Virus record (IMG/VR): IMGVR_UViG_3300046660_000488 | Span: 496,001 to 560,000 of that record | Reading direction: 5' to 3' (one strand) | Length of the DNA stretch: 64,000 bases | Shown here: in pieces, positions 2,748 through 25,463 of the stretch | Numbering within the stretch: the first letter of the stretch is position 1 | Layout: the number at the start of each line of letters is the position of its first letter | Translations under genes and position numbers: made by a program | The notes under the pieces: model-generated | The model's database searches: none | Seen by the model: only the letters and a program-made list of their open reading frames with translations | What the model was told of the DNA's origin: nothing

Positions 2748-3341
2748 ATGAATCTCAACTGGATCGAGAACCGTCACCGCATGCAGGCGGACGGCGCGCT
2801 GGGAAAGTGGAGCTACCGCACCGGCCGTGGTTCGGTGACGTTCCTGCCCAAGACCGAAAAGCCGTGGTCCGTCATGTGGGTCAAGATGGAGGACGGTCCC
2901 GAGAAGGATTTGTTCGGCGAACGCCACCGCGAGCACGAAATCGCCTCCTGCCACCCGAAACTCGTCGAGCAGATGGTCGAAGCGTTCGAGACCCCGAACC
3001 CGGCCGTCAACGTCGCGGGTGGTGATCCGGCCGACATCCTGCTGACCAAGCTGAAATTCGATTTCGCCATGACGGGCGGTGGTCGCCAGTACAGCGTCAA
3101 GTCGGGAAAGCATTATGTCAGCGTCCTGCTGACCAACACCTTCCTAGCCGTGCGCGTGGACAAGCGCGGAAACTGGGTCAACATGCTCCGGGTCATGACG
3201 GCATGGGACGGCACGGACGACTTGATCCCGCTGCACTGGCCCGACAATGTCGCCAATCCCATCGCTGTCGCGTGCCAGTTCGTCGTGGACGTCATGATCG
3301 ACGCCATCGCAGCCGAAACCAAGTGGGAAGAACCGCGCTGA
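2748..3341 (+). CDS. hypothetical protein
   Basis: ATG 2748 just after upstream stop; coupled to next gene. Confidence 0.65.
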   Translation: MNLNWIENRHRMQADGALGKWSYRTGRGSVTFLPKTEKPWSVMWVKMEDGPEKDLFGERHREHEIASCHPKLVEQMVEAFETPNPAVNVAGGDPADILLTKLKFDFAMTGGGRQYSVKSGKHYVSVLLTNTFLAVRVDKRGNWVNMLRVMTAWDGTDDLIPLHWPDNVANPIAVACQFVVDVMIDAIAAETKWEEPR

Positions 3342-3868
3342 TGGTCTGGAAGAACCCACTGCCGCTGAAGCTGATCGTCACCAACGACAGCCTGTCGTTC
3401 TTGGGCATGCCCGAGGGCTCGACCGGCCTGCCGATCCTTCCGCACCCCGGCGCCTTCGGCTTCGTCCGCAAGCACCACATCCACGAGGGCGTGGACCTCT
3501 ACGCGCCGGAGGGGACGCCGGTCACCGCCGTGGAGAAAGGCGTCGTCGTCGGAGTCATGCCGTTCACCGGCGAGCACGCCGGTTATCCCAACTGGGAGAA
3601 CACGTGGTGCGTTCTGGTCGAAGGGAAGACCGGCGTCGTCGTCTACGGCGAGATCGACCCGTCCGTCCATTTCGGTGATGAAGTGCGCGCGGGCGATCTG
3701 ATCGGCACGATCATGCGCGTCCTGAAAAACGACAAGGGACGTCCCATGTCGATGCTGCACCTTGAGCTTTATGTTCGAGGCACGCGGGACGTGGTGGAGT
3801 GGACCGGTCTTCCGCAAGACCCGTCGCACCTTGACCCGACGCCGCATCTGCGGAAAATCGCCGAATGA
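3341..3868 (+). CDS. M23 family metallopeptidase
   Basis: HEGVDL (HxxxD), GTPVTA, LHLE motifs. Confidence 0.8.
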   Translation: MVWKNPLPLKLIVTNDSLSFLGMPEGSTGLPILPHPGAFGFVRKHHIHEGVDLYAPEGTPVTAVEKGVVVGVMPFTGEHAGYPNWENTWCVLVEGKTGVVVYGEIDPSVHFGDEVRAGDLIGTIMRVLKNDKGRPMSMLHLELYVRGTRDVVEWTGLPQDPSHLDPTPHLRKIAE

Positions 3869-7328: not shown

Positions 7329-7684
7329 CCCTAGAAGACCTTCTCGCCTCGTGGCAGACCAGCGCGTGGCTGACATACGAGCGCCGGTTCAAAGTCTACG
7401 TCCGCAAGAGCCGCCGATACATCGACGGCAAGATGTACCCGGCGCTCGACATCGGCAACATGAGCGTTCCGGAGAAGCATCACCGCAAGGGGTACTTCAC
7501 CCGCTTCCTGACGCTTCTGGAGGCCACGGCGGACGAACGCGGTGACCTCGTCTACATCGAGAACATCCTAGAGCCGGGAATCGTCGGGTTTCTTGAACGT
7601 CGGGGCTATCACTACCTGACCAGCACCGATCCCCGCATCCCTTGCTATTACAGATGGCCCAAAGAAAAAGCCCCGGTCGAGTGA
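7325..7684 (+). CDS. GNAT-like acetyltransferase-fold protein
   Basis: HHRKGYF (motif A-like), FLERRGY. Confidence 0.55.
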   Translation: MTLEDLLASWQTSAWLTYERRFKVYVRKSRRYIDGKMYPALDIGNMSVPEKHHRKGYFTRFLTLLEATADERGDLVYIENILEPGIVGFLERRGYHYLTSTDPRIPCYYRWPKEKAPVE

Positions 7685-7717: not shown

Positions 7718-8443
7718 TTAGGCCGCTTCGTGCTCACGAACCGGCTGGGCGTGGGCGTGGATGGCGACCGGCTGCGACTTGGAGGCGGCTTCGCGTTTGG
7801 CGGCCTCGACCTCGTCCACGTTCGGGAACACGGTGTTGTGGTCGCGCTTGGCTTCCCAGACGGTCGTGGAGACCGACTGCTCAGGGATGCTCAGGCGGCG
7901 CGAGATCGTCTTGGGGCCGTAGCCGTAGGCGCGAAGCTCGATGATCCGGGCCTTGATCGCACGACGCTCTTCCATGCTCAGGGTGCGACGGTTGACCAGA
8001 CCACCCTTGGTCTTGTCGTCGCTCTCGGCCGCCTTGCGGGCCGCCTTAGCTTCGGCGAGGATGGCGTTGACGCGCTTGGTGTCGATGCCCTCGTCCTTGG
8101 CGATCTGGCTGGGCGTCTGGCCCTTCAGACGGCGCTCATCCACCCGCCCTTCGAGGCTTGTCGAGAGCAGCGGTTCGCCATTGAGCATTGGGACCTTGGC
8201 CTTGCTCTTGGCTTTCGCCTTGGGTGCGGTTTCCGGCGCGCCCAGCATCAGCGGCTCGGCGGCGGCCACGACCGGCTCAGGAGCCGCCACGGCGGCGACG
8301 GCGCTCAGGTTGGCGACCATCATCAGGTGGACCAGCATGCTGGCCCGTACGGGCTCTTGGAGCTTGTTGATGACGGCGACGAAGTCGGCGGCGTCCGGCG
8401 CGGTGATGAAGGTGGCCAGATCGGTGGGGTTCATCGTGTTCAT
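7718..8443 (-). CDS. putative DNA-binding protein with two HTH-like segments
   Basis: TPSQIAKDEGIDTKRVNAIL and GPKTISRRLSIPEQSVST. Confidence 0.6.
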   Translation of the reverse strand: MNTMNPTDLATFITAPDAADFVAVINKLQEPVRASMLVHLMMVANLSAVAAVAAPEPVVAAAEPLMLGAPETAPKAKAKSKAKVPMLNGEPLLSTSLEGRVDERRLKGQTPSQIAKDEGIDTKRVNAILAEAKAARKAAESDDKTKGGLVNRRTLSMEERRAIKARIIELRAYGYGPKTISRRLSIPEQSVSTTVWEAKRDHNTVFPNVDEVEAAKREAASKSQPVAIHAHAQPVREHEAA

Positions 8444-12038: not shown

Positions 12039-12264
12039 ATAGGCTGATGCCCGCCTTGGTCAGGAACCAAAGGATCGCAGCAGCAAAGAAAAAGCCTCGG
12101 GCGATGCGCTCGGCGTACGTAACGGGCCAAGTCGCCATCCACCAGAAGCCGAAACCGGCAAGTACGAGGATCGCAAAGATGAGAGCCATGATAAGTCTCC
12201 ACGTGACAGAATGTCACATAGATACTTAGTCACGGCGATCTATACGCCATTTTATTGCCAGAAT

Positions 12265-12348: not shown

Positions 12349-12630
12349 TCACCGCTGAGCGGCGAAGCTGGCGATATGCTTGCAGTTGGACATGACGTAA
12401 CCGACGTACTTCGGGTCGAAGTGACGGTCCGGATCGCTGAGCAGCGACACGTCTTCACGATCCAGTTGATAGACGCCATATTCGGCGCCGATGGCGTAGC
12501 GCTCGACCGGCCGGAAATTCCGACCGCTGATGCTGCGAATGGTGTCCGCCTTGGTGGCGGCGGTGAACGGCGATGAGGTGTTCTCAATCGCGACGATCTG
12601 GTTTTCAGATAGAACGACCGCAAGGGCCAT
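12349..12630 (-). CDS. hypothetical protein inside tRNA operon
   Basis: AGGAGG SD. Confidence 0.65.
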   Translation of the reverse strand: MALAVVLSENQIVAIENTSSPFTAATKADTIRSISGRNFRPVERYAIGAEYGVYQLDREDVSLLSDPDRHFDPKYVGYVMSNCKHIASFAAQR

Positions 12631-12663: not shown

Positions 12664-12748
12664 TGGTGAACTGGGTGGGACTCGAACCCACGACGGCTTT
12701 CGCGTCGGCTTAAAAGGCCGCTTCCTTCGCCACTCGGAACACCAGTCC
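12664..12748 (-). tRNA. tRNA-Lys(TTT), atypical long variable arm
   Basis: 85 nt; loop CT TTT AA; 13-nt variable region; class-II-like D arm. Confidence 0.85.
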
Positions 12749-12757
12749 ATTGGCTGT

Positions 12758-12995
12758 TTCAACCAGAGTGCTTGGCCGGGCTTCCCCCATTCGGTCAGCA
12801 TCGTCTTGTGACGATCTCTACATGAAGAAACGCGCTTCCTCGAAGGGTAAGCTCCGCCCAACATGCACCCAAGCGCTCAGAGGCGTCGGGGTCGAAATAA
12901 CCAGCAGAGGCTGGCTGCACTTCCACCCTAATCAAGTTAAGGCTCAGGTGCGGGATAGGCGCCTCTTTGGAATTTTTCCAAGCGCTCTGGTTGAA
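12758..12995. ncRNA. candidate structured ncRNA between tRNA-Lys genes
   Basis: 18-bp terminal helix 12758-12775/12978-12995 enclosing several hairpins. Confidence 0.5.
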
Positions 12996-12997
12996 GA

Positions 12998-13082
12998 TGG
13001 AGGATCAGGTGGGACTCGAACCCACGGTGGCATACGCAGTTGATTAAGAGTCAACCCCCTTCGCCGCTCGGGACACTGATCC
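12998..13082 (-). tRNA. tRNA-Lys(CTT), atypical long variable arm
   Basis: 85 nt; GTTGA CT CTT AA TCAAC; variable TGCGTATGCCACC; U73. Confidence 0.85.
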
Positions 13083-13387: not shown

Positions 13388-13762
13388 ATGGGTACTTCGT
13401 TTACCGGCATCAAGACACTATCTGGCATCAAGGTCGCCGATCCGGCGCCCACCAATGTTTCTCCTGTCTTTACCGACCCGACCTACGACCCGGCTGGTGG
13501 TGGGGCCGCTGGTACGCTGGTCGCGGAATTCCTCGAAAACTCGTCGGTGAATTTCCAACTCCATGCGACGAACGCCCAGAGCTTCAGCATCATGGGCAAC
13601 GCCGGAGCGCTTCCCGGTGGCGTGTCGATGTCGTCGGCTGGCCTGTTCACCGGAACGGCTCCCAACGTGACCCAGACCACCAGCTACACCTTCATGGTGC
13701 GTGCGTCTAACGGCGGCCTGAACACCGACAAGCTGATCACCATCGACGTCATCAACGTCTAA
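13388..13762 (+). CDS. putative Ig-like domain virion protein, antisense inside tRNA operon
   Basis: GALPGGVSMSSAGLFTGT..YTFMVRASNG pattern; TAAATA 13353; GAGGA SD. Confidence 0.7.
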   Translation: MGTSFTGIKTLSGIKVADPAPTNVSPVFTDPTYDPAGGGAAGTLVAEFLENSSVNFQLHATNAQSFSIMGNAGALPGGVSMSSAGLFTGTAPNVTQTTSYTFMVRASNGGLNTDKLITIDVINV

Positions 13763-13848: not shown

Positions 13849-13926
13849 TGGTGGGCACGGCGGGGATCGAACCCGCAGCGGTACGCTTTTTAAGAACGCT
13901 GTGTCTACCAATTTCACCACGTGCCC
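13849..13926 (-). tRNA. tRNA-Leu(TAA), short variable region
   Basis: Leu-type D arm; loop CT TAA AA; 78 nt. Confidence 0.85.
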
Positions 13927-14056: not shown

Positions 14057-14142
14057 TGGTGTGGATGACAGGACTCGAACCTGCACGCCTTGCGGCCACC
14101 GTTGCTGAGACGGCGATGTCTACCAATTTCAGTCACATCCAC
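14057..14142 (-). tRNA. tRNA-Leu(CAG), C37 variant
   Basis: GCCGT CT CAG CA ACGGT; long variable arm; CCA. Confidence 0.88.
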
Positions 14143-14150
14143 GTAGTGCG

Positions 14151-14352
14151 TTTTGAAGAGCGCGGGCATGTATTCCCGACACCGGACTCGAACCGGTACA
14201 AGTGATCTCACCTACATGCTGGGCGGATGGGGTGCTCCCCATCTATCCGGTTTGGCCCCCTCCCGTCAAAGTAGGAGGGGGTTTCACCAGAAGCGTCTAC
14301 CAGTTCCACCAGTCCGGCCGGGTCTTTCTCCCGGCAACTGCTCTCTTCAAAA
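14151..14352 (-). ncRNA. tRNA-Leu-derived expanded RNA without CCA
   Basis: Leu D arm TGGTGGAACTGGTAGACGC and T arm ACCGG TTCGAGT CCGGT retained; anticodon loop replaced by extra hairpins; 10-bp closing helix. Confidence 0.65.
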
Positions 14353-14354
14353 TT

Positions 14355-14432
14355 TGGTGCGCTTGCCCGGACTCGAACCGGGAACACTCTCCGACCTGAA
14401 CGGAGCGACTTTACCAATTTGCCCACAAGCGC
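14355..14432 (-). tRNA. tRNA-Leu(CAG), short variable region
   Basis: CTCCG TT CAG GT CGGAG; 78 nt; CCA. Confidence 0.88.
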
Positions 14433-14447
14433 GTAAACTGTATTTGA

Positions 14448-14534
14448 TGGTATGGATGACAGGAATCGAACCTGCACGTTTCAAGAACACCGGAACCTAA
14501 ATCCAGCGCGTCTACCTAGTTCCGCCACATCCAC
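14448..14534 (-). tRNA. tRNA-Leu(TAG)
   Basis: Class II cloverleaf; loop TT TAG GT. Confidence 0.95.
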
Positions 14535-14610
14535 ACAATAAAACACAGTCGTCTACTTTACAAAACTCGCAAAACGTGCATGATGCCCACAATCCAATTG
14601 GAGTGCGATC

Positions 14611-14904
14611 ATGCTTTCGACTTTTCTGGCTGGCCTCGCTGTCTATTTCAAGATCGGCGCGGTCATTGCCATCATCAGCTTCGTCTGGTTCAAGGCGGAG
14701 CCCTTCTTCAAGAAGCAAGCCTCCTTCAAGCACGGCTATTTCGATCTGCCGATCTCGATAGCCTTCCTTTTCGCATGGCCGATCATGCTGATCGCCTTGG
14801 CGTATCACTCCATTCTGGAAGTGATCGAGCGCGTGCGGCGCTACCGCCAGAAGCGTCGTAAATTGGTGGGGAAGGTGGGGCTCGAACCCACACGTCATTT
14901 CTGA
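14611..14904 (+). CDS. small membrane protein, antisense in tRNA operon
   Basis: GGAG SD; two hydrophobic segments; 3' end overlaps tRNA-Leu on the opposite strand. Confidence 0.6.
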   Translation: MLSTFLAGLAVYFKIGAVIAIISFVWFKAEPFFKKQASFKHGYFDLPISIAFLFAWPIMLIALAYHSILEVIERVRRYRQKRRKLVGKVGLEPTRHF

Positions 14905-15253: not shown

Positions 15254-15330
15254 TGGCATGGATAACAGGACTCGAACCTGTAACCTTCAGCTTCGCAAGC
15301 TGGTGCTCTCTCCAATTGAGCTATACCCAT
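15254..15330 (-). tRNA. tRNA-Arg(GCG)
   Basis: CCAGC TT GCG AA GCTGA; CCA; flanks complementary. Confidence 0.88.
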
Positions 15331-17036: not shown

Positions 17037-17975
17037 ATGCCTGATATTATCAAAGCCCGTCTAACGGACGGCCAGTCCCCGGTTTATTTCGTCAACGGCA
17101 CGGTCGTGGCGAACACGCCTGCCAAGGTGGACAATATCCCGACCGTCGTGGGTCCGCCCGGCCCGCAGGGCGTCAGCGTGCGATCCGCAGCCCTCGACGG
17201 CAACACGCTGTCGTTCACGCTGACCGACAACTCCATCATCACGGCCGGGACGGTCCCGAGCGGCCCGCAGGGTCCGCAAGGTGACACGGGTCCGGTTGGC
17301 CCGCAAGGCGCTCAGGGCGCGCAGGGCATCCAAGGCCTGAAGGGCGACCGTGGCGACATCGGTCCGACTGGTCCGACCGGCGCTCAAGGTCCGCAGGGTC
17401 CGCAGGGTCCGCAAGGCGCTCAAGGTCCGGCTGGTCCCACGGGCGCGAAGGGTGACACTGGAAACACCGGCCCGGCTGGTCCGACCGGCGCGCAAGGCGT
17501 CCAAGGTCCGTCTGGTGCTCAAGGCCTCCCCGGAAACGTCGGAGCCCAAGGCCCGGCTGGTCCTACCGGTGCGTCTGGTCCGAAGGGCGACACCGGCCTG
17601 ACTGGTCCACAGGGTTCGACTGGTCCTGCCGGACCTCCGGGGCCGACCTATGAGAACGTTGTGGCCCAAGTTGTGTCGGGATCGGTCAACTGCGACATCA
17701 GCGGCAACAATCTCTACAACTATCTGTTGGCTGGAAACGTCGTCCTGAATTTCACCGGCGTCGCTAACAACACCCGCACGTACAACACTGTTCTCGCGAT
17801 CAAGCAGGGCACGGCGGGTAACTATACCGTCACGTGGCCCGCCAACTGCCTGACCCCGAACAACCAGAACATCACCATGACCCCGACCGCGAACGCCGTC
17901 GATGTCTACACCATCTTCACCTACGACGGCGGCATTAACTTCCTGCTGACGCCGGTGGCCACGGACTACCGTTAA
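17037..17975 (+). CDS. collagen-like (Gly-X-Y) fibre protein
   Basis: Long uninterrupted GXY run; tail-fibre-like C-terminal domain; TAAATA 17004. Confidence 0.85.
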
Positions 17976-19438: not shown

Positions 19439-19476
19439 TCAGAAGCTGAGAAATCAGCATCCAATCAGAGCGAAGC

Positions 19477-19510
19477 AAGCCTCCAAGGGAAACCTCGGAG
19501 GCTTTTTCTT
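19477..19510 (+). terminator. attenuator terminator of plus tRNA operon
   Basis: AAGCCTCC-AAGGGAAACCTC-GGAGGCTTTTTCTT. Confidence 0.85.
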
Positions 19511-19551
19511 TGGCCTCTCTTCAACCTCCAACCGTCCCTCGATTGTTTCGT

Positions 19552-19626
19552 GGTTCATTAGCTCAGCGGTAGAGCAATCGCTTGATAAGCGATAGGTCGC
19601 TGGTTCGAATCCAGCATGAACTACCA
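19552..19626 (+). tRNA. tRNA-Ile(GAT)
   Basis: ATCGC TT GAT AA GCGAT; CCA. Confidence 0.94.
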
Positions 19627-20029: not shown

Positions 20030-20101
20030 TGAGGGATAGTTCAGCGGTAGAACGCCTGTCTCTGGAACAGGATGTCGTAGGTTCGATCCCTACTCCCTCA
20101 T
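20030..20101 (+). tRNA. tRNA-Gln(CTG), CCA not encoded
   Basis: CCTGT CT CTG GA ACAGG; 16-bp complementary flanks. Confidence 0.9.
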
Positions 20102-20122
20102 CAAACACACGTCCCCATAGGT

Positions 20123-20220: not shown

Positions 20221-20306
20221 TGGGGAATGGTGTAATGGTAACATCCCGGCCTTTGACTCCGGAGACCGAGAAGGATTTGTAGGTTCGAGCCCTACTTCCC
20301 CAGCCA
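20221..20306 (+). tRNA. tRNA-Gln(TTG), long variable arm
   Basis: 86 nt; loop CT TTG AC; variable AGACCGAGAAGGATTT. Confidence 0.85.
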
Positions 20307-20747: not shown

Positions 20748-20824
20748 CTAGGCGTAGCGCAGTCTGGTAGCGCGCCTGCTTTGGGAGCAGGATGTCGCAG
20801 GTTCGAATCCTGCCGCCTAGACCA
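20748..20824 (+). tRNA. tRNA-Pro(TGG)
   Basis: CCTGC TT TGG GA GCAGG; C1:G72, A73. Confidence 0.95.
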
Positions 20825-20931: not shown

Positions 20932-21019
20932 TCCTCACGACCCAGCTTGGTGACGGGCGCCGACTGTTAATCGGATGACATGGAAATGTGGCAAGGTTCG
21001 AAACCTTGGTGAGGAACCA
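20932..21019 (+). tRNA. tRNA-Asn(GTT), long variable arm
   Basis: 88 nt; loop CT GTT AA; variable stem ACAT-GGAA-ATGT. Confidence 0.85.
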
Positions 21020-24185: not shown

Positions 24186-24260
24186 GCCGGGGTAGCTCAG
24201 GGGTAGAGCAGCGGGCTGAAAATCCGCGTGTCGGAGGTTCGAATCCTCTCCCCGGCACCA
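24186..24260 (+). tRNA. tRNA-Phe(GAA)
   Basis: GCGGG CT GAA AA TCCGC; CCA. Confidence 0.95.
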
Positions 24261-24261
24261 T

Positions 24262-24336
24262 GGTCGCGTAGCTCAGCGGGAGAGCGTCCCCTTGACGTGG
24301 GGAAGGTCGCAGGTTCAATCCCTGCCGCGACTACCA
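24262..24336 (+). tRNA. tRNA-Val(GAC)
   Basis: TCCCC TT GAC GT GGGGA; CCA. Confidence 0.93.
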
Positions 24337-24366
24337 TTTTTCTCAACCAGAAAGGAACCGACTCCC

Positions 24367-25463
24367 ATGGGGTTCAGCCGCTAAGTCCAGAGAGCCTTCA
24401 ACGGTATCTGGCGATCAAAGACCTAACTGACCCGGCGACGGGTAAACACGCAATCAACGTTGTCCTCCAGAAATTGACGAAGGCGGTCCAAGACTGGGCG
24501 GGTTTACACCCGGAAGTCCTGCGTTCCTCCCCAATCGTTTCCATCCAAGACAATTACGACCGCCTCTACTATGAGGCGGACGCTGTCGCACGCTCGTCGC
24601 GCTATTCGCATTATGTGGATGACACCCACATCTTGCGGACGCACACGACGGCGGCCGTGCCCGGCTATCTGCGCGAGACCACGGACGACCGTCTGATGGT
24701 TCTGCCGGGCATCGTCTATCGCCGCGACGTCATGGACAAGATGCACGTCGGCGAACCACACCAAGTCGATCTGTGGATCGTCAAGCAGGCCCGCCTGCGG
24801 CGCCGCGATCTTGAGGCCATGATCTCGGCCATCATGACTGCGATCCTACCCGGCCGCGTGTACCGCTGCAACGAGACCATCCATCCCTACACCGTCAACG
24901 GCCTTGAGGTCGAAGTGCAGGTTGGCGACCGTTGGGTCGAGGTCTTGGAATGCGGCGAGGCCCACCCATGGGTTCTGAACGACGCTGGGCTGTCTTCAGC
25001 CACATGGTCGGGACTGGCCATGGGCATCGGTCTGGACCGTCTGGTGATGCTCCTGAAGGGCGTGGAGGACATCCGGCTGCTACGGAGCACCGACAAGCGC
25101 GTCTACGGCCAGATGCAGACCATGCAGCCCTATCTACCGGTCAGCGATCAGCCGAGCGCTAAGCGGGACCTGTCCATCGTCGTTGACGAAGTGGACATGG
25201 AACTGTTGGGCGACAAGGTCCGCACTTTGCTGGGCGACCGGGCCGAGTGGATGGAGGAAATCATCCACGTCGGCGACTACGGCTGGCACGATGTTCCGGA
25301 CGCTGCTCGCCAACGTCTGGGTATGGGGCAGGATCAACGGAACCTCGTTATCCGGCTGATCATGCGCTCGCCGACCCAGAGCATCCCTCGCGAGGTCGCA
25401 AACGAGGTCTACGCGCAAGTCTACGAAGGTCTGCATCAGGGCTCCACGGTCGGCTATCGCTGA
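24367..25463 (+). CDS. monomeric PheRS-like protein (PheS catalytic plus FDX-ACB domain); ATG is out of frame, needs -1 frameshift or sequence correction
   Basis: LRTHTTA, GIVYRRD..D..H..EPHQVD, WVEVLECG, GLAMGIGLDRLVML..DIRLL, RDLSI. Confidence 0.85.

What the first reader, a model, noticed from the sequence alone, without database searches (positions are those of the whole stretch)
14151..14352. tRNA-Leu core rebuilt into a 200-nt multidomain RNA
Seen (minus): intact Leu D arm and T arm, and a short acceptor remnant (CGGAC/GTCGG). The anticodon stem TCTGGT/ACCGGA continues into a CCCCCTCCT/GGGAGGGGG hairpin, with an extra GATGGGG/CCCCATC hairpin. A possible pseudoknot GCATGTA/TACATGC lies where CCA should be. 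A 5' GCCGGG/CCCGGC hairpin and a TTTTGAAGAG/CTCTTCAAAA helix close the RNA. The gains are structured rather than random decay, suggesting an elbow-presenting tRNA mimic or decoy.
Basis: partly seen in the sequence, partly recalled or inferred. Interest (0 to 1): 0.62.

Follow-up and report, generated by a model that had tools for sequence, protein, structure and literature searches.

The report
Remodelled tRNA-Leu copy in huge phage
A 212-base spacer in a huge soil phage's tRNA array is a rebuilt copy of a leucine-type tRNA gene that can no longer work as a tRNA; no relative or transcript was found, so it is more likely a young relic than a proven tRNA mimic.

Summary
The added hairpins fold far better than shuffled sequence (z about -5).

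The window lies in a 578-kb rhizosphere phage with 69 tRNA genes. The element fills the gap between two tRNA-Leu(CAG) genes. Only the D arm (17/19) and T arm (17/18) are detectably derived from tRNA-Leu.
- The acceptor pairs 5 of 7.
- There is no CCA.
- There is no anticodon loop at the normal distance.
- ARAGORN and Rfam do not call it.

The 10-bp closing helix is the same kind of leader/trailer stem that flanks about 15 true tRNA genes of this phage. The tip of the long anticodon arm carries CUUUGAC, the exact anticodon loop of the phage's own long tRNA-Gln(UUG).

The closest relative has the same array with a compact Leu block and no element. BLAST and a covariance model over 17 related phage records found no homologue. 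No RNA data exist.

Best reading: a young, lineage-specific remodelled tRNA duplicate that is co-transcribed. A decoy or mimic role is possible but unsupported.

The parts
14343..14352 (-). 5' arm of the 10-bp closing (leader/trailer) helix, UUUUGAAGAG; starts 2 nt after the CCA of tRNA-Leu(CAG, 78 nt)
   Evidence: Pair probability is 0.63-1.0. It is the same kind of stem as at about 15 true tRNA genes.
14317..14335 (-). 5' hairpin GCCGGG-AGAAAGA-CCCGGC (6 bp, 7-nt loop)
   Evidence: probability 0.55-0.90. It is unique in the genome. It has no similarity to any tRNA of the phage.
14312..14318 (-). acceptor 5' strand remnant GCCGGAC, followed by U8 G9 (14311-14310)
   Evidence: It pairs 5 of 7 with 14174-14180 (drawing). 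The 69 called tRNAs have 7/7 (66 genes) or 6/7 (3 genes).
14293..14309 (-). D arm of tRNA-Leu type (3-bp stem GUG/CGC, loop with A14 and G18 G19)
   Evidence: 17/19 identity to tRNA-Leu(GAG/CAA) over 14311-14293, which includes U8 and G9. Score 28, against a shuffle maximum of 26.
14246..14291 (-). long anticodon-type arm: 6-bp stem, 4x4 internal loop GAAA/CCAA, 9-bp stem, 8-nt loop A+CUUUGAC (loop 14265-14272)
   Evidence: The loop heptamer equals the anticodon loop of the phage's tRNA-Gln(UUG, 86 nt) at window 20221-20306.
14226..14243 (-). 7-bp hairpin GAUGGGG-AGCA-CCCCAUC at the place of a class II variable arm
   Evidence: ARAGORN uses it as the variable arm in the collapsed test sequence.
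14198..14225 (-). 28-nt extra stretch between the variable-arm hairpin and the T arm; holds GCAUGUA (14213-14219)
   Evidence: no tRNA similarity. It pairs with 14166-14172 in the constrained fold.
14181..14197 (-). T arm ACCGG-UUCGAGU-CCGGU
   Evidence: 17/18 identity to tRNA-Leu(CAA) over 14199-14182, which adds two upstream bases. Score 31, against a shuffle maximum of 22. It was found as an orphan T arm.
14161..14180 (-). acceptor 3' strand GUCGGGA, A at the discriminator place, then UACAUGCCCGCG instead of CCA
   Evidence: 64 of 69 called tRNAs end in CCA.
14151..14160 (-). 3' arm of the closing helix, CUCUUCAAAA; 8 nt before tRNA-Leu(CAG, 86 nt)

Best explanation
The 212-nt spacer is a lineage-specific, heavily remodelled duplicate of one of the phage's long-variable-arm (class II, Leu-type) tRNA genes. 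It still sits inside the leader/trailer stem 'cassette' that this phage uses around many tRNA genes.

Shown:
- It keeps the D arm and T arm of tRNA-Leu, so an elbow could form.
- It has a weakened acceptor (5 of 7 pairs), no CCA and no anticodon loop at the normal distance.
- It carries about 175 nt of new sequence, much of it well-folding.
- It is absent from the closest relative's syntenic array and from 17 related phage records.

Inferred:
- It is transcribed with the minus-strand tRNA array, folds into a stem-closed multi-hairpin RNA, and cannot be aminoacylated or decode.
- It most likely arose by duplication and illegitimate recombination inside the Leu block.
- It persists as a young tRNA-derived relic, a passenger RNA, rather than as a conserved functional RNA.

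I put about 0.55 on this 'relic/passenger' reading and about 0.3 on the same object having been put to use as a tRNA mimic. The tRNA-derived origin itself I hold at about 0.9.
For: Context:
- The window is part of a 578,292-bp IMG/VR virus record with terminal repeats.
- The record has 69 ARAGORN tRNA genes, 40 of them in the window.
- The element lies between tRNA-Leu(CAG) 14355-14432 and tRNA-Leu(CAG) 14057-14142.

Origin:
- Only the D-arm and T-arm stretches resemble tRNAs, and the best matches are Leu(GAG/CAA). The rest does not exceed shuffles.
- When the 9-bp stem with its junction and the 28 nt after the second hairpin are removed in silico, ARAGORN calls a 90-nt class II tRNA using the native acceptor, D arm, stem, hairpin and T arm. 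The frame is therefore intact.

Loss of tRNA function:
- ARAGORN does not call it, with or without introns.
- Rfam's tRNA model gives no match even at E <= 10.
- The same model does find other aberrant tRNA-like genes of this phage and of its relatives.
- The acceptor pairs 5/7, against 7/7 in 66 and 6/7 in 3 of the true tRNAs. There is no CCA, against 64 of 69.

Cassette:
- 15 of 69 tRNA genes have leader/trailer duplexes of -10 kcal/mol or better, against 1.4% in mismatched controls.

Lineage-specific:
- Relative G002 (terminase 75% identical) has the same gene order, Arg-Arg-Arg-Leu...Lys...Trp. Its Leu block has gaps of 5-43 nt and no element.
- There is no BLAST match beyond D- or T-arm pieces.
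- Covariance model R2 of the new part finds only itself in 18 records, 9 of them at least 90% complete.
- No array spacer of this phage is conserved in relatives. Spacers therefore turn over fast.
Against: - Three perfect added hairpins (6, 7 and 9 bp) and z = -5.3 are not what slow decay of a tRNA gene produces.
- The D-loop and T-loop consensus is untouched.
- The tip of the long arm is an exact copy of a real anticodon loop of this phage. My rough estimate is p about 0.01-0.02 for any loop of the element matching any of the 57 distinct anticodon loops.
- A second sample from another study holds the region in near-identical form at low depth.
- Phage genomes usually shed useless DNA.
- Two other spacers of the same array are also strongly structured and stem-closed. 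The phage may therefore make several non-tRNA RNAs from this array.
- Relatives G001 and G003 each carry an uncalled Leu-like gene without an anticodon loop in their Leu blocks.
Confidence: 0.55

Rival explanations
1. It is a functional tRNA mimic or decoy. The RNA is cut out of the array transcript at its terminal stem. It then presents a Leu-type elbow and, on a long arm, a tRNA-Gln(UUG)-type anticodon loop. In this way it would bind or distract a tRNA-binding protein, for example a host tRNA-cleaving defence nuclease or a modification enzyme.
For: - The added parts fold strongly and unambiguously.
- The elbow-forming loops are intact.
- The loop CUUUGAC is identical to that of the phage's own tRNA-Gln(UUG).
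- It sits in a cassette stem like those of expressed tRNAs.
- Similar anticodon-less Leu-like genes occur in G001 and G003, and a second anticodon-less tRNA-like gene occurs in this phage at genome 458000-458059.
- The phage clade carries many unusual tRNAs. This fits an arms race over tRNAs, which is background knowledge on anticodon nucleases reviewed in PMC7824862.
Against: - No homologue and no covariation were found.
- It is absent from the closest relative's syntenic array.
- The G001 and G003 elements share a GCGAA-capped arm with each other but not with this element. A model built from the G001 element scores this element at only 4.7 bits.
- The acceptor helix is the weakest part, and a competing 7-bp helix may replace it.
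- No partner protein was identified.
- No expression data exist.
Confidence: 0.3
2. It is a working tRNA gene interrupted by small introns or expansion segments. Such genes seem to occur in relatives. The inserts would be removed, or tolerated, to give a class II tRNA.
For: - Relatives carry tRNA genes with perfect 7-bp acceptors, most of them with an encoded CCA, and 35-110-nt inserts.
- Removing two blocks in silico yields an ARAGORN-callable tRNA-Gln(UUG).
Against: - The blocks that must go are two separate pieces on either side of the loop plus a third in the variable region. They are not one intron.
- The internal loop GAAA/CCAA does not rebuild a loop with U33 and a purine at 37 (sequence).
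- It is too small for a group I intron, and Rfam gives no intron match.
- There is no bulge-helix-bulge motif, because the loop is a symmetric 4x4.
- The phage has no RtcB ligase.
- The acceptor pairs 5/7 and there is no CCA, unlike the insert-bearing tRNAs of relatives.
- All Leu and Gln anticodons are already covered by normal genes.
Confidence: 0.05
3. It is a Y RNA-like (YrlA-type) RNA: a tRNA-like module on a terminal stem that binds an Rsr/Ro60 protein.
For: - It has a terminal helix formed by the two ends plus a tRNA-like module.
- Some jumbo phages encode TROVE proteins with a tRNA-like partner (PMC7824862).
Against: - Rfam YrlA (RF02553) gives no match in the element even at E <= 10.
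- No TROVE domain is encoded anywhere in the phage.
- In YrlA, to my knowledge, the terminal stem continues from the anticodon-stem position and the acceptor end is closed. Here the order of the parts is that of a normal tRNA.
Confidence: 0.03
4. It is not a real feature, only chance complementarity in a GC-rich spacer.
For: - A 10-bp inverted repeat within 200 nt is expected about a dozen times in 64 kb by chance (my estimate).
- CCCUCC...GGAGGG-type hairpins occur at about 7 places in the genome.
Against: - z = -4.9 and z = -5.3 with 0 of 200 shuffles as good.
- The D and T arms match tRNA-Leu beyond all shuffles.
- The closing helix exactly brackets the gap between two tRNAs and matches the phage's cassette design.
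Confidence: 0.03

Closest known systems
Pseudo-tRNAs and stable non-tRNA RNAs inside phage tRNA clusters (for example the two stable RNAs, rnaC and rnaD, of the phage T4 tRNA cluster; from my own knowledge, not retrieved here)
   Same: - It is encoded between tRNA genes on the same strand.
- It is of similar size (100-200 nt).
- It has tRNA-like ends or arms.
- It is presumably cut from the same precursor.
- Its function is unknown.
   Different: - No sequence relation could be tested, because no model is held.
- Here the tRNA-Leu ancestry of the D and T arms is explicit.
- The anticodon arm is lengthened to 15 bp plus an internal loop.
Canonical class II tRNA-Leu, and this phage's long tRNA-Gln(UUG, 86 nt)
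   Same: - D arm, T arm, a hairpin at the variable-arm place, a 5-6 bp anticodon-type stem and A at the discriminator place.
- The loop heptamer CUUUGAC equals that of the phage's tRNA-Gln(UUG).
   Different: - The acceptor pairs 5/7 and there is no CCA.
- The anticodon-like loop sits 9 bp plus a 4x4 loop further out.
- There are 28 extra nt before the T arm and an extra 5' hairpin.
- ARAGORN and Rfam do not call it.
Bacterial Y RNA-like YrlA (Rfam RF02553)
   Same: A tRNA-like module with D/T-type loops, carried on a helix formed by the RNA's two ends.
   Different: - No Rfam match.
- No Rsr/TROVE gene in the phage.
- The parts are in the normal tRNA order, not the permuted order.
Intron-bearing pre-tRNAs (extended anticodon arm) and the insert-bearing tRNA genes of related huge phages (e.g. 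L116:3269-3381 in G002)
   Same: - The anticodon stem is continued by an internal loop and a further GC-rich helix. In G002 this is CCUCCC/GGGAGG, close to the CCCUCC/GGGAGG here.
   Different: - The G002 gene has a perfect acceptor, a CCA and a loop that can be rebuilt to CUCAUAA. This element has none of these.
- No splicing machinery or motif was identified.
Regulatory pseudo-tRNAs such as tRNA-Other of Bacillus cereus (from my own knowledge)
   Same: A tRNA-derived gene that is a poor or null substrate for translation and may act otherwise.
   Different: Those keep a normal cloverleaf size. No relation was shown.

Membership tests
tRNA (Rfam RF00005 / ARAGORN) | Scores at or above the family threshold of a tRNA covariance model or a tRNA finder | tested here: not met
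   - No RF00005 match at the gathering score or at E <= 10 in a 301-nt search.
- ARAGORN does not call it, with or without introns.
tRNA (Rfam RF00005 / ARAGORN) | 7-bp acceptor stem with a 3' NCCA end (encoded in this phage) | tested here: not met
   - 5 of 7 pairs, then A-UAC instead of A-CCA.
- The true tRNAs have 7/7 in 66 and 6/7 in 3 genes, and CCA in 64 of 69.
tRNA (Rfam RF00005 / ARAGORN) | 5-bp anticodon stem closed by a 7-nt loop with U33 and a purine at 37 | tested here: not met
   - The stem opens into a 4x4 internal loop and a further 9-bp helix.
- The only anticodon-like loop (A+CUUUGAC) is at the far tip.
tRNA (Rfam RF00005 / ARAGORN) | D arm and T arm with the conserved G18 G19 and UUCRANY loops | tested here: met
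   17/19 and 17/18 identity to the phage's tRNA-Leu genes, above all shuffles.
Group I intron in a tRNA gene | Intron of about 200 nt or more with the group I core; Rfam Intron_gpI match | tested here: not met
   - The inserts are 34, 28 and 19 nt.
- No Rfam match other than the tRNAs in the window, and none in the element at E <= 10.
Archaeal/eukaryal-type tRNA intron | Bulge-helix-bulge motif at the anticodon arm; splicing endonuclease and RtcB-type ligase | tested here: not met
   - The junction is a symmetric 4x4 internal loop, not two 3-nt bulges 4 bp apart.
- The phage has no RtcB.
- The endonuclease family was not searched.
Y RNA-like (YrlA, RF02553) | Match to the YrlA model; Rsr/TROVE partner gene; tRNA-like module with a closed acceptor on the Rsr-binding stem | tested here: not met
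   - No match in the element.
- No TROVE domain in the 578-kb genome.
- The parts are in the normal tRNA order.
tmRNA | tRNA-Ala-like ends plus a tag reading frame | tested here: not met
   - ARAGORN finds no tmRNA in the genome.
- Rfam gives no tmRNA match in the window.
Conserved structured RNA family of this phage clade | Homologues in related genomes with compensatory changes in the helices | tested here: not met
   - BLAST in 6 relatives and against all fetched arrays.
- Model R2 over 18 records finds only itself.
- Model R1, built from the G001 element, gives 4.7 bits here.
- Closer relatives than terminase 75% identity were not available.
Phage tRNA 'cassette' with leader/trailer stem (described here) | A 9-14 bp helix between the sequence just upstream and just downstream of the gene | tested here: met
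   - The 10-bp helix is 14352-14343 with 14160-14151.
- Comparable stems flank 15 of 69 tRNA genes, against 1.4% in controls.
- Unlike at true tRNAs, the stem is not separated from the body by the 4-nt T[TC]G[YA] linker alone. The 5' side has 7 nt plus a hairpin, and the 3' side has 13 nt.

The most novel reading that the evidence does not exclude
The element is one of a set of deliberately remodelled tRNA-shaped RNAs made by this clade of huge soil phages. It would be a stem-closed RNA that cannot be aminoacylated. It would show a Leu-type elbow and a tRNA-Gln(UUG) anticodon loop on an over-long arm, and serve as bait for a host tRNA-targeting defence enzyme or a tRNA-modifying enzyme. It would be processed from the array by the same leader/trailer stems as the true tRNAs.
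Probability: 0.2. Interest if true: 0.7.

Novelty: new variant of a known kind. Interest (0 to 1): 0.4.

Why it matters
Taken alone, this is a tRNA-derived oddity in one uncultured phage. Its wider value is as an entry point. Huge soil phages of this clade carry 50-70 tRNA genes, and standard tRNA finders skip many of them or their neighbours. The skipped items include:
- Leu-like genes without an anticodon loop.
- tRNAs with 35-110-nt inserts.
- Lys, Gln and Asn tRNAs on long-variable-arm bodies.
- Stem-closed structured spacers.

If any of these are functional mimics or regulated tRNAs, they bear on how phages defend their translation against tRNA-cleaving host immunity. The present element gives no proof of that. 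It shows how such RNAs can arise from duplicated tRNA cassettes.

Tried and rejected
- Phage GenBank collection: megablast of 3 kb found nothing, and blastn of the element found only a 35-nt piece of the neighbouring tRNA-Leu, query bases 13-47, outside the element.
- IMG/VR pattern scan for the stem/insert junction: no hit.
- Neighbouring 386-aa protein as an anchor: no relatives found.
- PheRS-like protein as an anchor: one relative, G001.
- Terminase as an anchor: 80 loci. These gave the 17 records that were searched.
- Metagenome scan with a 20-mer from the neighbouring tRNA-Leu(CAG, 78 nt): 15 contigs, all sharing only that 20-22-mer and carrying no tRNA there.
- ARAGORN intron mode with a low minimum mostly fused neighbouring tRNAs and was not used.
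- Model R1, built from the G001 Leu-like element, behaved as a generic tRNA model.
- The shared CCCUCC/GGGAGG stem with an insert-bearing tRNA of G002 is not significant. Such hairpins occur at about 7 places in the genome.
- A 35-codon reading frame starting in the second hairpin has a Shine-Dalgarno spacing of about 16 nt and was dismissed (read from the sequence).
- No promoter-like or terminator-like site lies in the element.
- Reads: only contigs of two DNA runs could be laid. There was no RNA and there were no informative variants in the element.
- A check for TAG recoding by open-frame totals was inconclusive in this GC-rich genome.
- The large protein searches, structure prediction and complex prediction were not needed and were not used.

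Full report
**What the window is.**
- The window is bases 496001-560000 of a 578,292-bp IMG/VR virus record with direct terminal repeats. It is a huge phage of about 58% G+C.
- The DNA is held at about 157x depth in a rhizosphere metagenome that is probably its source. A second run from another study holds it in near-identical form at low depth. No RNA run holds it.
- ARAGORN finds 69 tRNA genes in the genome, 40 of them in the window, in two arrays.
- The finding lies in the minus-strand array, which reads Arg, Leu, Met, Lys, Trp. It fills the 212-nt gap (14143-14354) between tRNA-Leu(CAG, 78 nt; 14355-14432) and tRNA-Leu(CAG, 86 nt; 14057-14142).

**Check of the observation.**
- There are two corrections. 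The acceptor remnant has a G.G mismatch and pairs only 5 of 7 in the tRNA register. The junction inside the long arm is a symmetric 4x4 internal loop (GAAA/CCAA).
- The spacer folds at -93.5 kcal/mol, z = -4.9.
- The 68 nt of new sequence (long arm plus second hairpin) fold at -39.6 kcal/mol, z = -5.3, with one structure taking 80% of the ensemble.
- The closing helix, the 5' hairpin, the anticodon-type stem and both added hairpins have pair probabilities of 0.85-1.0.
- The acceptor, D and T stems are not predicted by thermodynamics alone, as is common for tRNAs.
- When the D and T arms are enforced, the fold prefers the 7-bp GCAUGUA/UACAUGC helix as a nested helix around the T hairpin, rather than the weak acceptor.
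- That helix is therefore a competitor of the cloverleaf rather than a demonstrated pseudoknot. On its own it is not beyond chance.
- The hairpins are unique in the genome and are not a repeat family.

**What is derived from tRNA.**
- Each part of the element was aligned locally against all 69 tRNAs, with shuffles as controls. Only two parts stand out.
- The U8-G9-D-arm stretch is 17/19 identical to Leu(GAG) and Leu(CAA).
- The T arm is 17/18 identical to Leu(CAA).
- The 5' hairpin, the long arm, the variable region and both flanks show nothing above the shuffles.
- I then removed two blocks in silico, for analysis only: the 9-bp stem with its junction, and the 28 nt after the second hairpin. 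ARAGORN then calls a 90-nt class II tRNA using the native acceptor, D arm, 5-bp stem, 7-bp variable hairpin and T arm.
- The cloverleaf frame is therefore still there, interrupted by three additions.
- The anticodon ARAGORN reads in that test is UUG. The tip of the long arm is A+CUUUGAC, and CUUUGAC is the exact anticodon loop of the phage's own unusual 86-nt tRNA-Gln(UUG) at 20221-20306.
- Only one of the 57 distinct anticodon loops in the genome has this sequence. I estimate roughly a 1-2% chance that some loop of the element matches some anticodon loop. This is suggestive, not decisive.

**Why it is not a tRNA.**
- ARAGORN does not call it, with or without introns.
- Rfam's tRNA model finds nothing in it even at E <= 10.
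- The same model does pick up other aberrant tRNA-like genes: genome 458000-458059 at 33.4 bits, 105417-105522 at 27.9 bits, and insert-bearing tRNAs in relatives at 45-54 bits.
- Of the true tRNAs, 66 have 7/7 acceptor pairs and 3 have 6/7, and 64 of 69 end in an encoded CCA. The element has 5/7 and UAC in place of CCA.
- The anticodon-like loop lies 9 bp plus an internal loop beyond the normal position. From what is known of tRNA geometry on the ribosome, it could not decode.
- All Leu and Gln anticodons are already supplied by normal genes.

**The closing helix is a general design of this phage.**
- I measured the duplex energy between the 16 nt upstream and the 16 nt downstream of every tRNA gene.
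- 15 of 69 have -10 kcal/mol or better, down to -27. Only 1.4% of mismatched leader/trailer pairs reach that.
- These stems are 9-14 bp long. They start right after the CCA. On the 5' side they are separated from the tRNA by a 4-nt linker of the form T[TC]G[T/C/A].
- The element's UUUUGAAGAG/CUCUUCAAAA helix is of this kind. However, it is separated from the tRNA-like core by 7 nt plus a hairpin on the 5' side and by 13 nt on the 3' side.
- This speaks for descent from a tRNA cassette and for co-transcription and processing with its neighbours. The latter is an inference.
- Two other spacers of the same array are also very structured. Spacer 12039-12264 has z = -5.3. Spacer 12749-12997 has z = -6.6 and a closing helix of about 18 bp.

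**Relatives.**
- The terminase gave 80 related loci, and a PheRS-like protein gave one more record.
- The closest large relative, G002 (terminase 75% identical), has the same array order. Its Leu genes are packed with gaps of 5-43 nt. It has neither the element, nor the 78-nt tRNA-Leu(CAG), nor the 427-nt spacer.
- BLAST of the element against six relatives finds only D- or T-arm pieces.
- None of the large spacers tested in this phage's two arrays matches any fetched relative sequence.
- A covariance model of the new 68 nt (R2) was searched over 18 records, 9 of them at least 90% complete. It finds only itself, at 103 bits.
It remains untested on the transcript side.

**A wider pattern that keeps the functional reading alive.** Related phages carry many tRNA-shaped genes that ARAGORN skips.
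- G001 (L111:8987-9109, minus strand) and G003 (L124:3288-3436, minus strand) each have a Leu-like gene in the Leu block whose anticodon arm is a plain hairpin capped by the same GCGAA loop.
- The G001 gene also has a 9-bp leader/trailer stem.
- These two resemble each other more than they resemble the element. A model built from the G001 gene scores the element at only 4.7 bits.
- G002 has two tRNAs with 35-37-nt inserts that extend the anticodon arm. One has a CCUCCC/GGGAGG helix like the one here, but such hairpins are common in the genome.
- G004 and G005 share a conserved 45-nt insert.
- A G004 tRNA-Ile(GAU) has an insert of about 110 nt in its D loop.
- Most of these insert-bearing genes keep a perfect acceptor and a CCA. 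The element does not.

**Mechanisms considered and tested.**
- The phage encodes no TROVE/Rsr protein, no RtcB and no LeuRS domain.
- Rfam YrlA does not match the element.
- There is no promoter-like or terminator-like site in it.
- The small reading frames nearby are unrelated. The frame at 14512-14898 has no Pfam match. The frame at 13388-13762, on the other strand, has an Ig-like domain.

**Verdict.**
- The best-supported account is a young, lineage-specific remodelling of a duplicated class II tRNA cassette. It has lost every feature needed for charging and decoding, and is probably still transcribed and folded as a stem-closed RNA.
- Whether the added hairpins are selected cannot be shown with the data at hand. 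I give about 0.55 to a relic or passenger RNA and about 0.3 to an exapted tRNA mimic. The rest goes to an insert-bearing functional tRNA, a Y RNA-like RNA, or chance.

Noticed in passing
whole phage genome G000; in the window e.g. tRNA-Pro(UGG) 20748-20824, tRNA-Gln(CUG) 20030-20102, tRNA-Arg(GCG) 15254-15330: About 15 of 69 tRNA genes are bracketed by 9-14 bp leader/trailer stems (duplex down to -27 kcal/mol, against 1.4% in mismatched controls). A conserved 4-nt linker T[TC]G[T/C/A] precedes base +1, and the 3' arm starts right after the CCA. This looks like a dedicated precursor-processing design.
   Followed up: partly
window 12664-12748, 12998-13082 (Lys), 20221-20306 (Gln UUG), 20932-21019 (Asn); 13849-13926 and 14355-14432 (Leu, 78 nt): These tRNAs have the 'wrong' body type. 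Lys, Gln and Asn tRNAs of 85-88 nt have long variable regions. Leu tRNAs of 78 nt have short ones. They stand beside normal-length copies. The same oddities recur in relatives G001, G002, G003, G005 and G008.
   Followed up: partly
window 12749-12997 (-) and 12039-12264 (-): Two further large spacers of the same array fold far better than shuffles (z = -6.6 and -5.3). The first is closed by a helix of about 18 bp. Neither has an Rfam match at the gathering score, and neither has similarity in relatives.
   Followed up: partly
G000 genome 109999-110155 (-), outside the window (L181): There are two adjacent tRNA genes with anticodon CUA (amber suppressor type), scoring 72 and 63 bits with Rfam tRNA. 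A crude open-frame test for TAG recoding was inconclusive.
   Followed up: partly
G000 genome 458000-458059 (-), 457032-457098 (-), 105417-105522 (+) (L176, L177): These are more tRNA-like genes that ARAGORN misses.
- One has a class I body, a 5-bp stem capped by a 4-nt loop instead of an anticodon loop, and a 5/7 acceptor.
- One is a 105-nt class II-like gene with a perfect acceptor and an irregular middle.
   Followed up: partly
relatives: L116:3113-3219 and 3269-3381 (G002); L131:9545-9675 (G004); L136:7516-7633, 8042-8162, 19469-19592 (G005); L129:16904-17097 (G004): These tRNA genes have perfect acceptors, most with a CCA, and 35-110-nt inserts in the anticodon arm, the variable region or the D loop. 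A 45-nt insert is conserved between G004 and G005. How, or whether, the inserts are removed is unknown.
   Followed up: partly
L111:8987-9109 (-) in G001 and L124:3288-3436 (-) in G003: Each is a Leu-like tRNA-shaped gene inside the Leu block whose anticodon arm is a plain hairpin capped by the same pentaloop GCGAA. The G001 copy is closed by a 9-bp leader/trailer stem.
   Followed up: partly
L131:15867-16331 (+) in G004: A GOLLD RNA (Rfam RF02032, 199.9 bits) lies in the tRNA array of a related huge phage. A tRNA-Asn gene lies inside it.
   Followed up: no
L129 about 7625-7660 (+) in G004: A stretch reading CUGAUGAG-hairpin-CGAAAC, the hammerhead ribozyme core, lies next to an uncalled tRNA-like gene (sequence seen). 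It was not among the listed Rfam rows and was not checked further.
   Followed up: no
window 24228-25463 (+), 17037-17975 (+), 12349-12630 (-): - A PheRS-like class II synthetase gene follows the plus-strand array directly. It is 65% identical in G002 and 53% in G001.
- A collagen-repeat protein lies between the arrays.
- A 93-aa frame inside the Trp-Lys spacer is conserved in G001 at 44% identity.
   Followed up: partly
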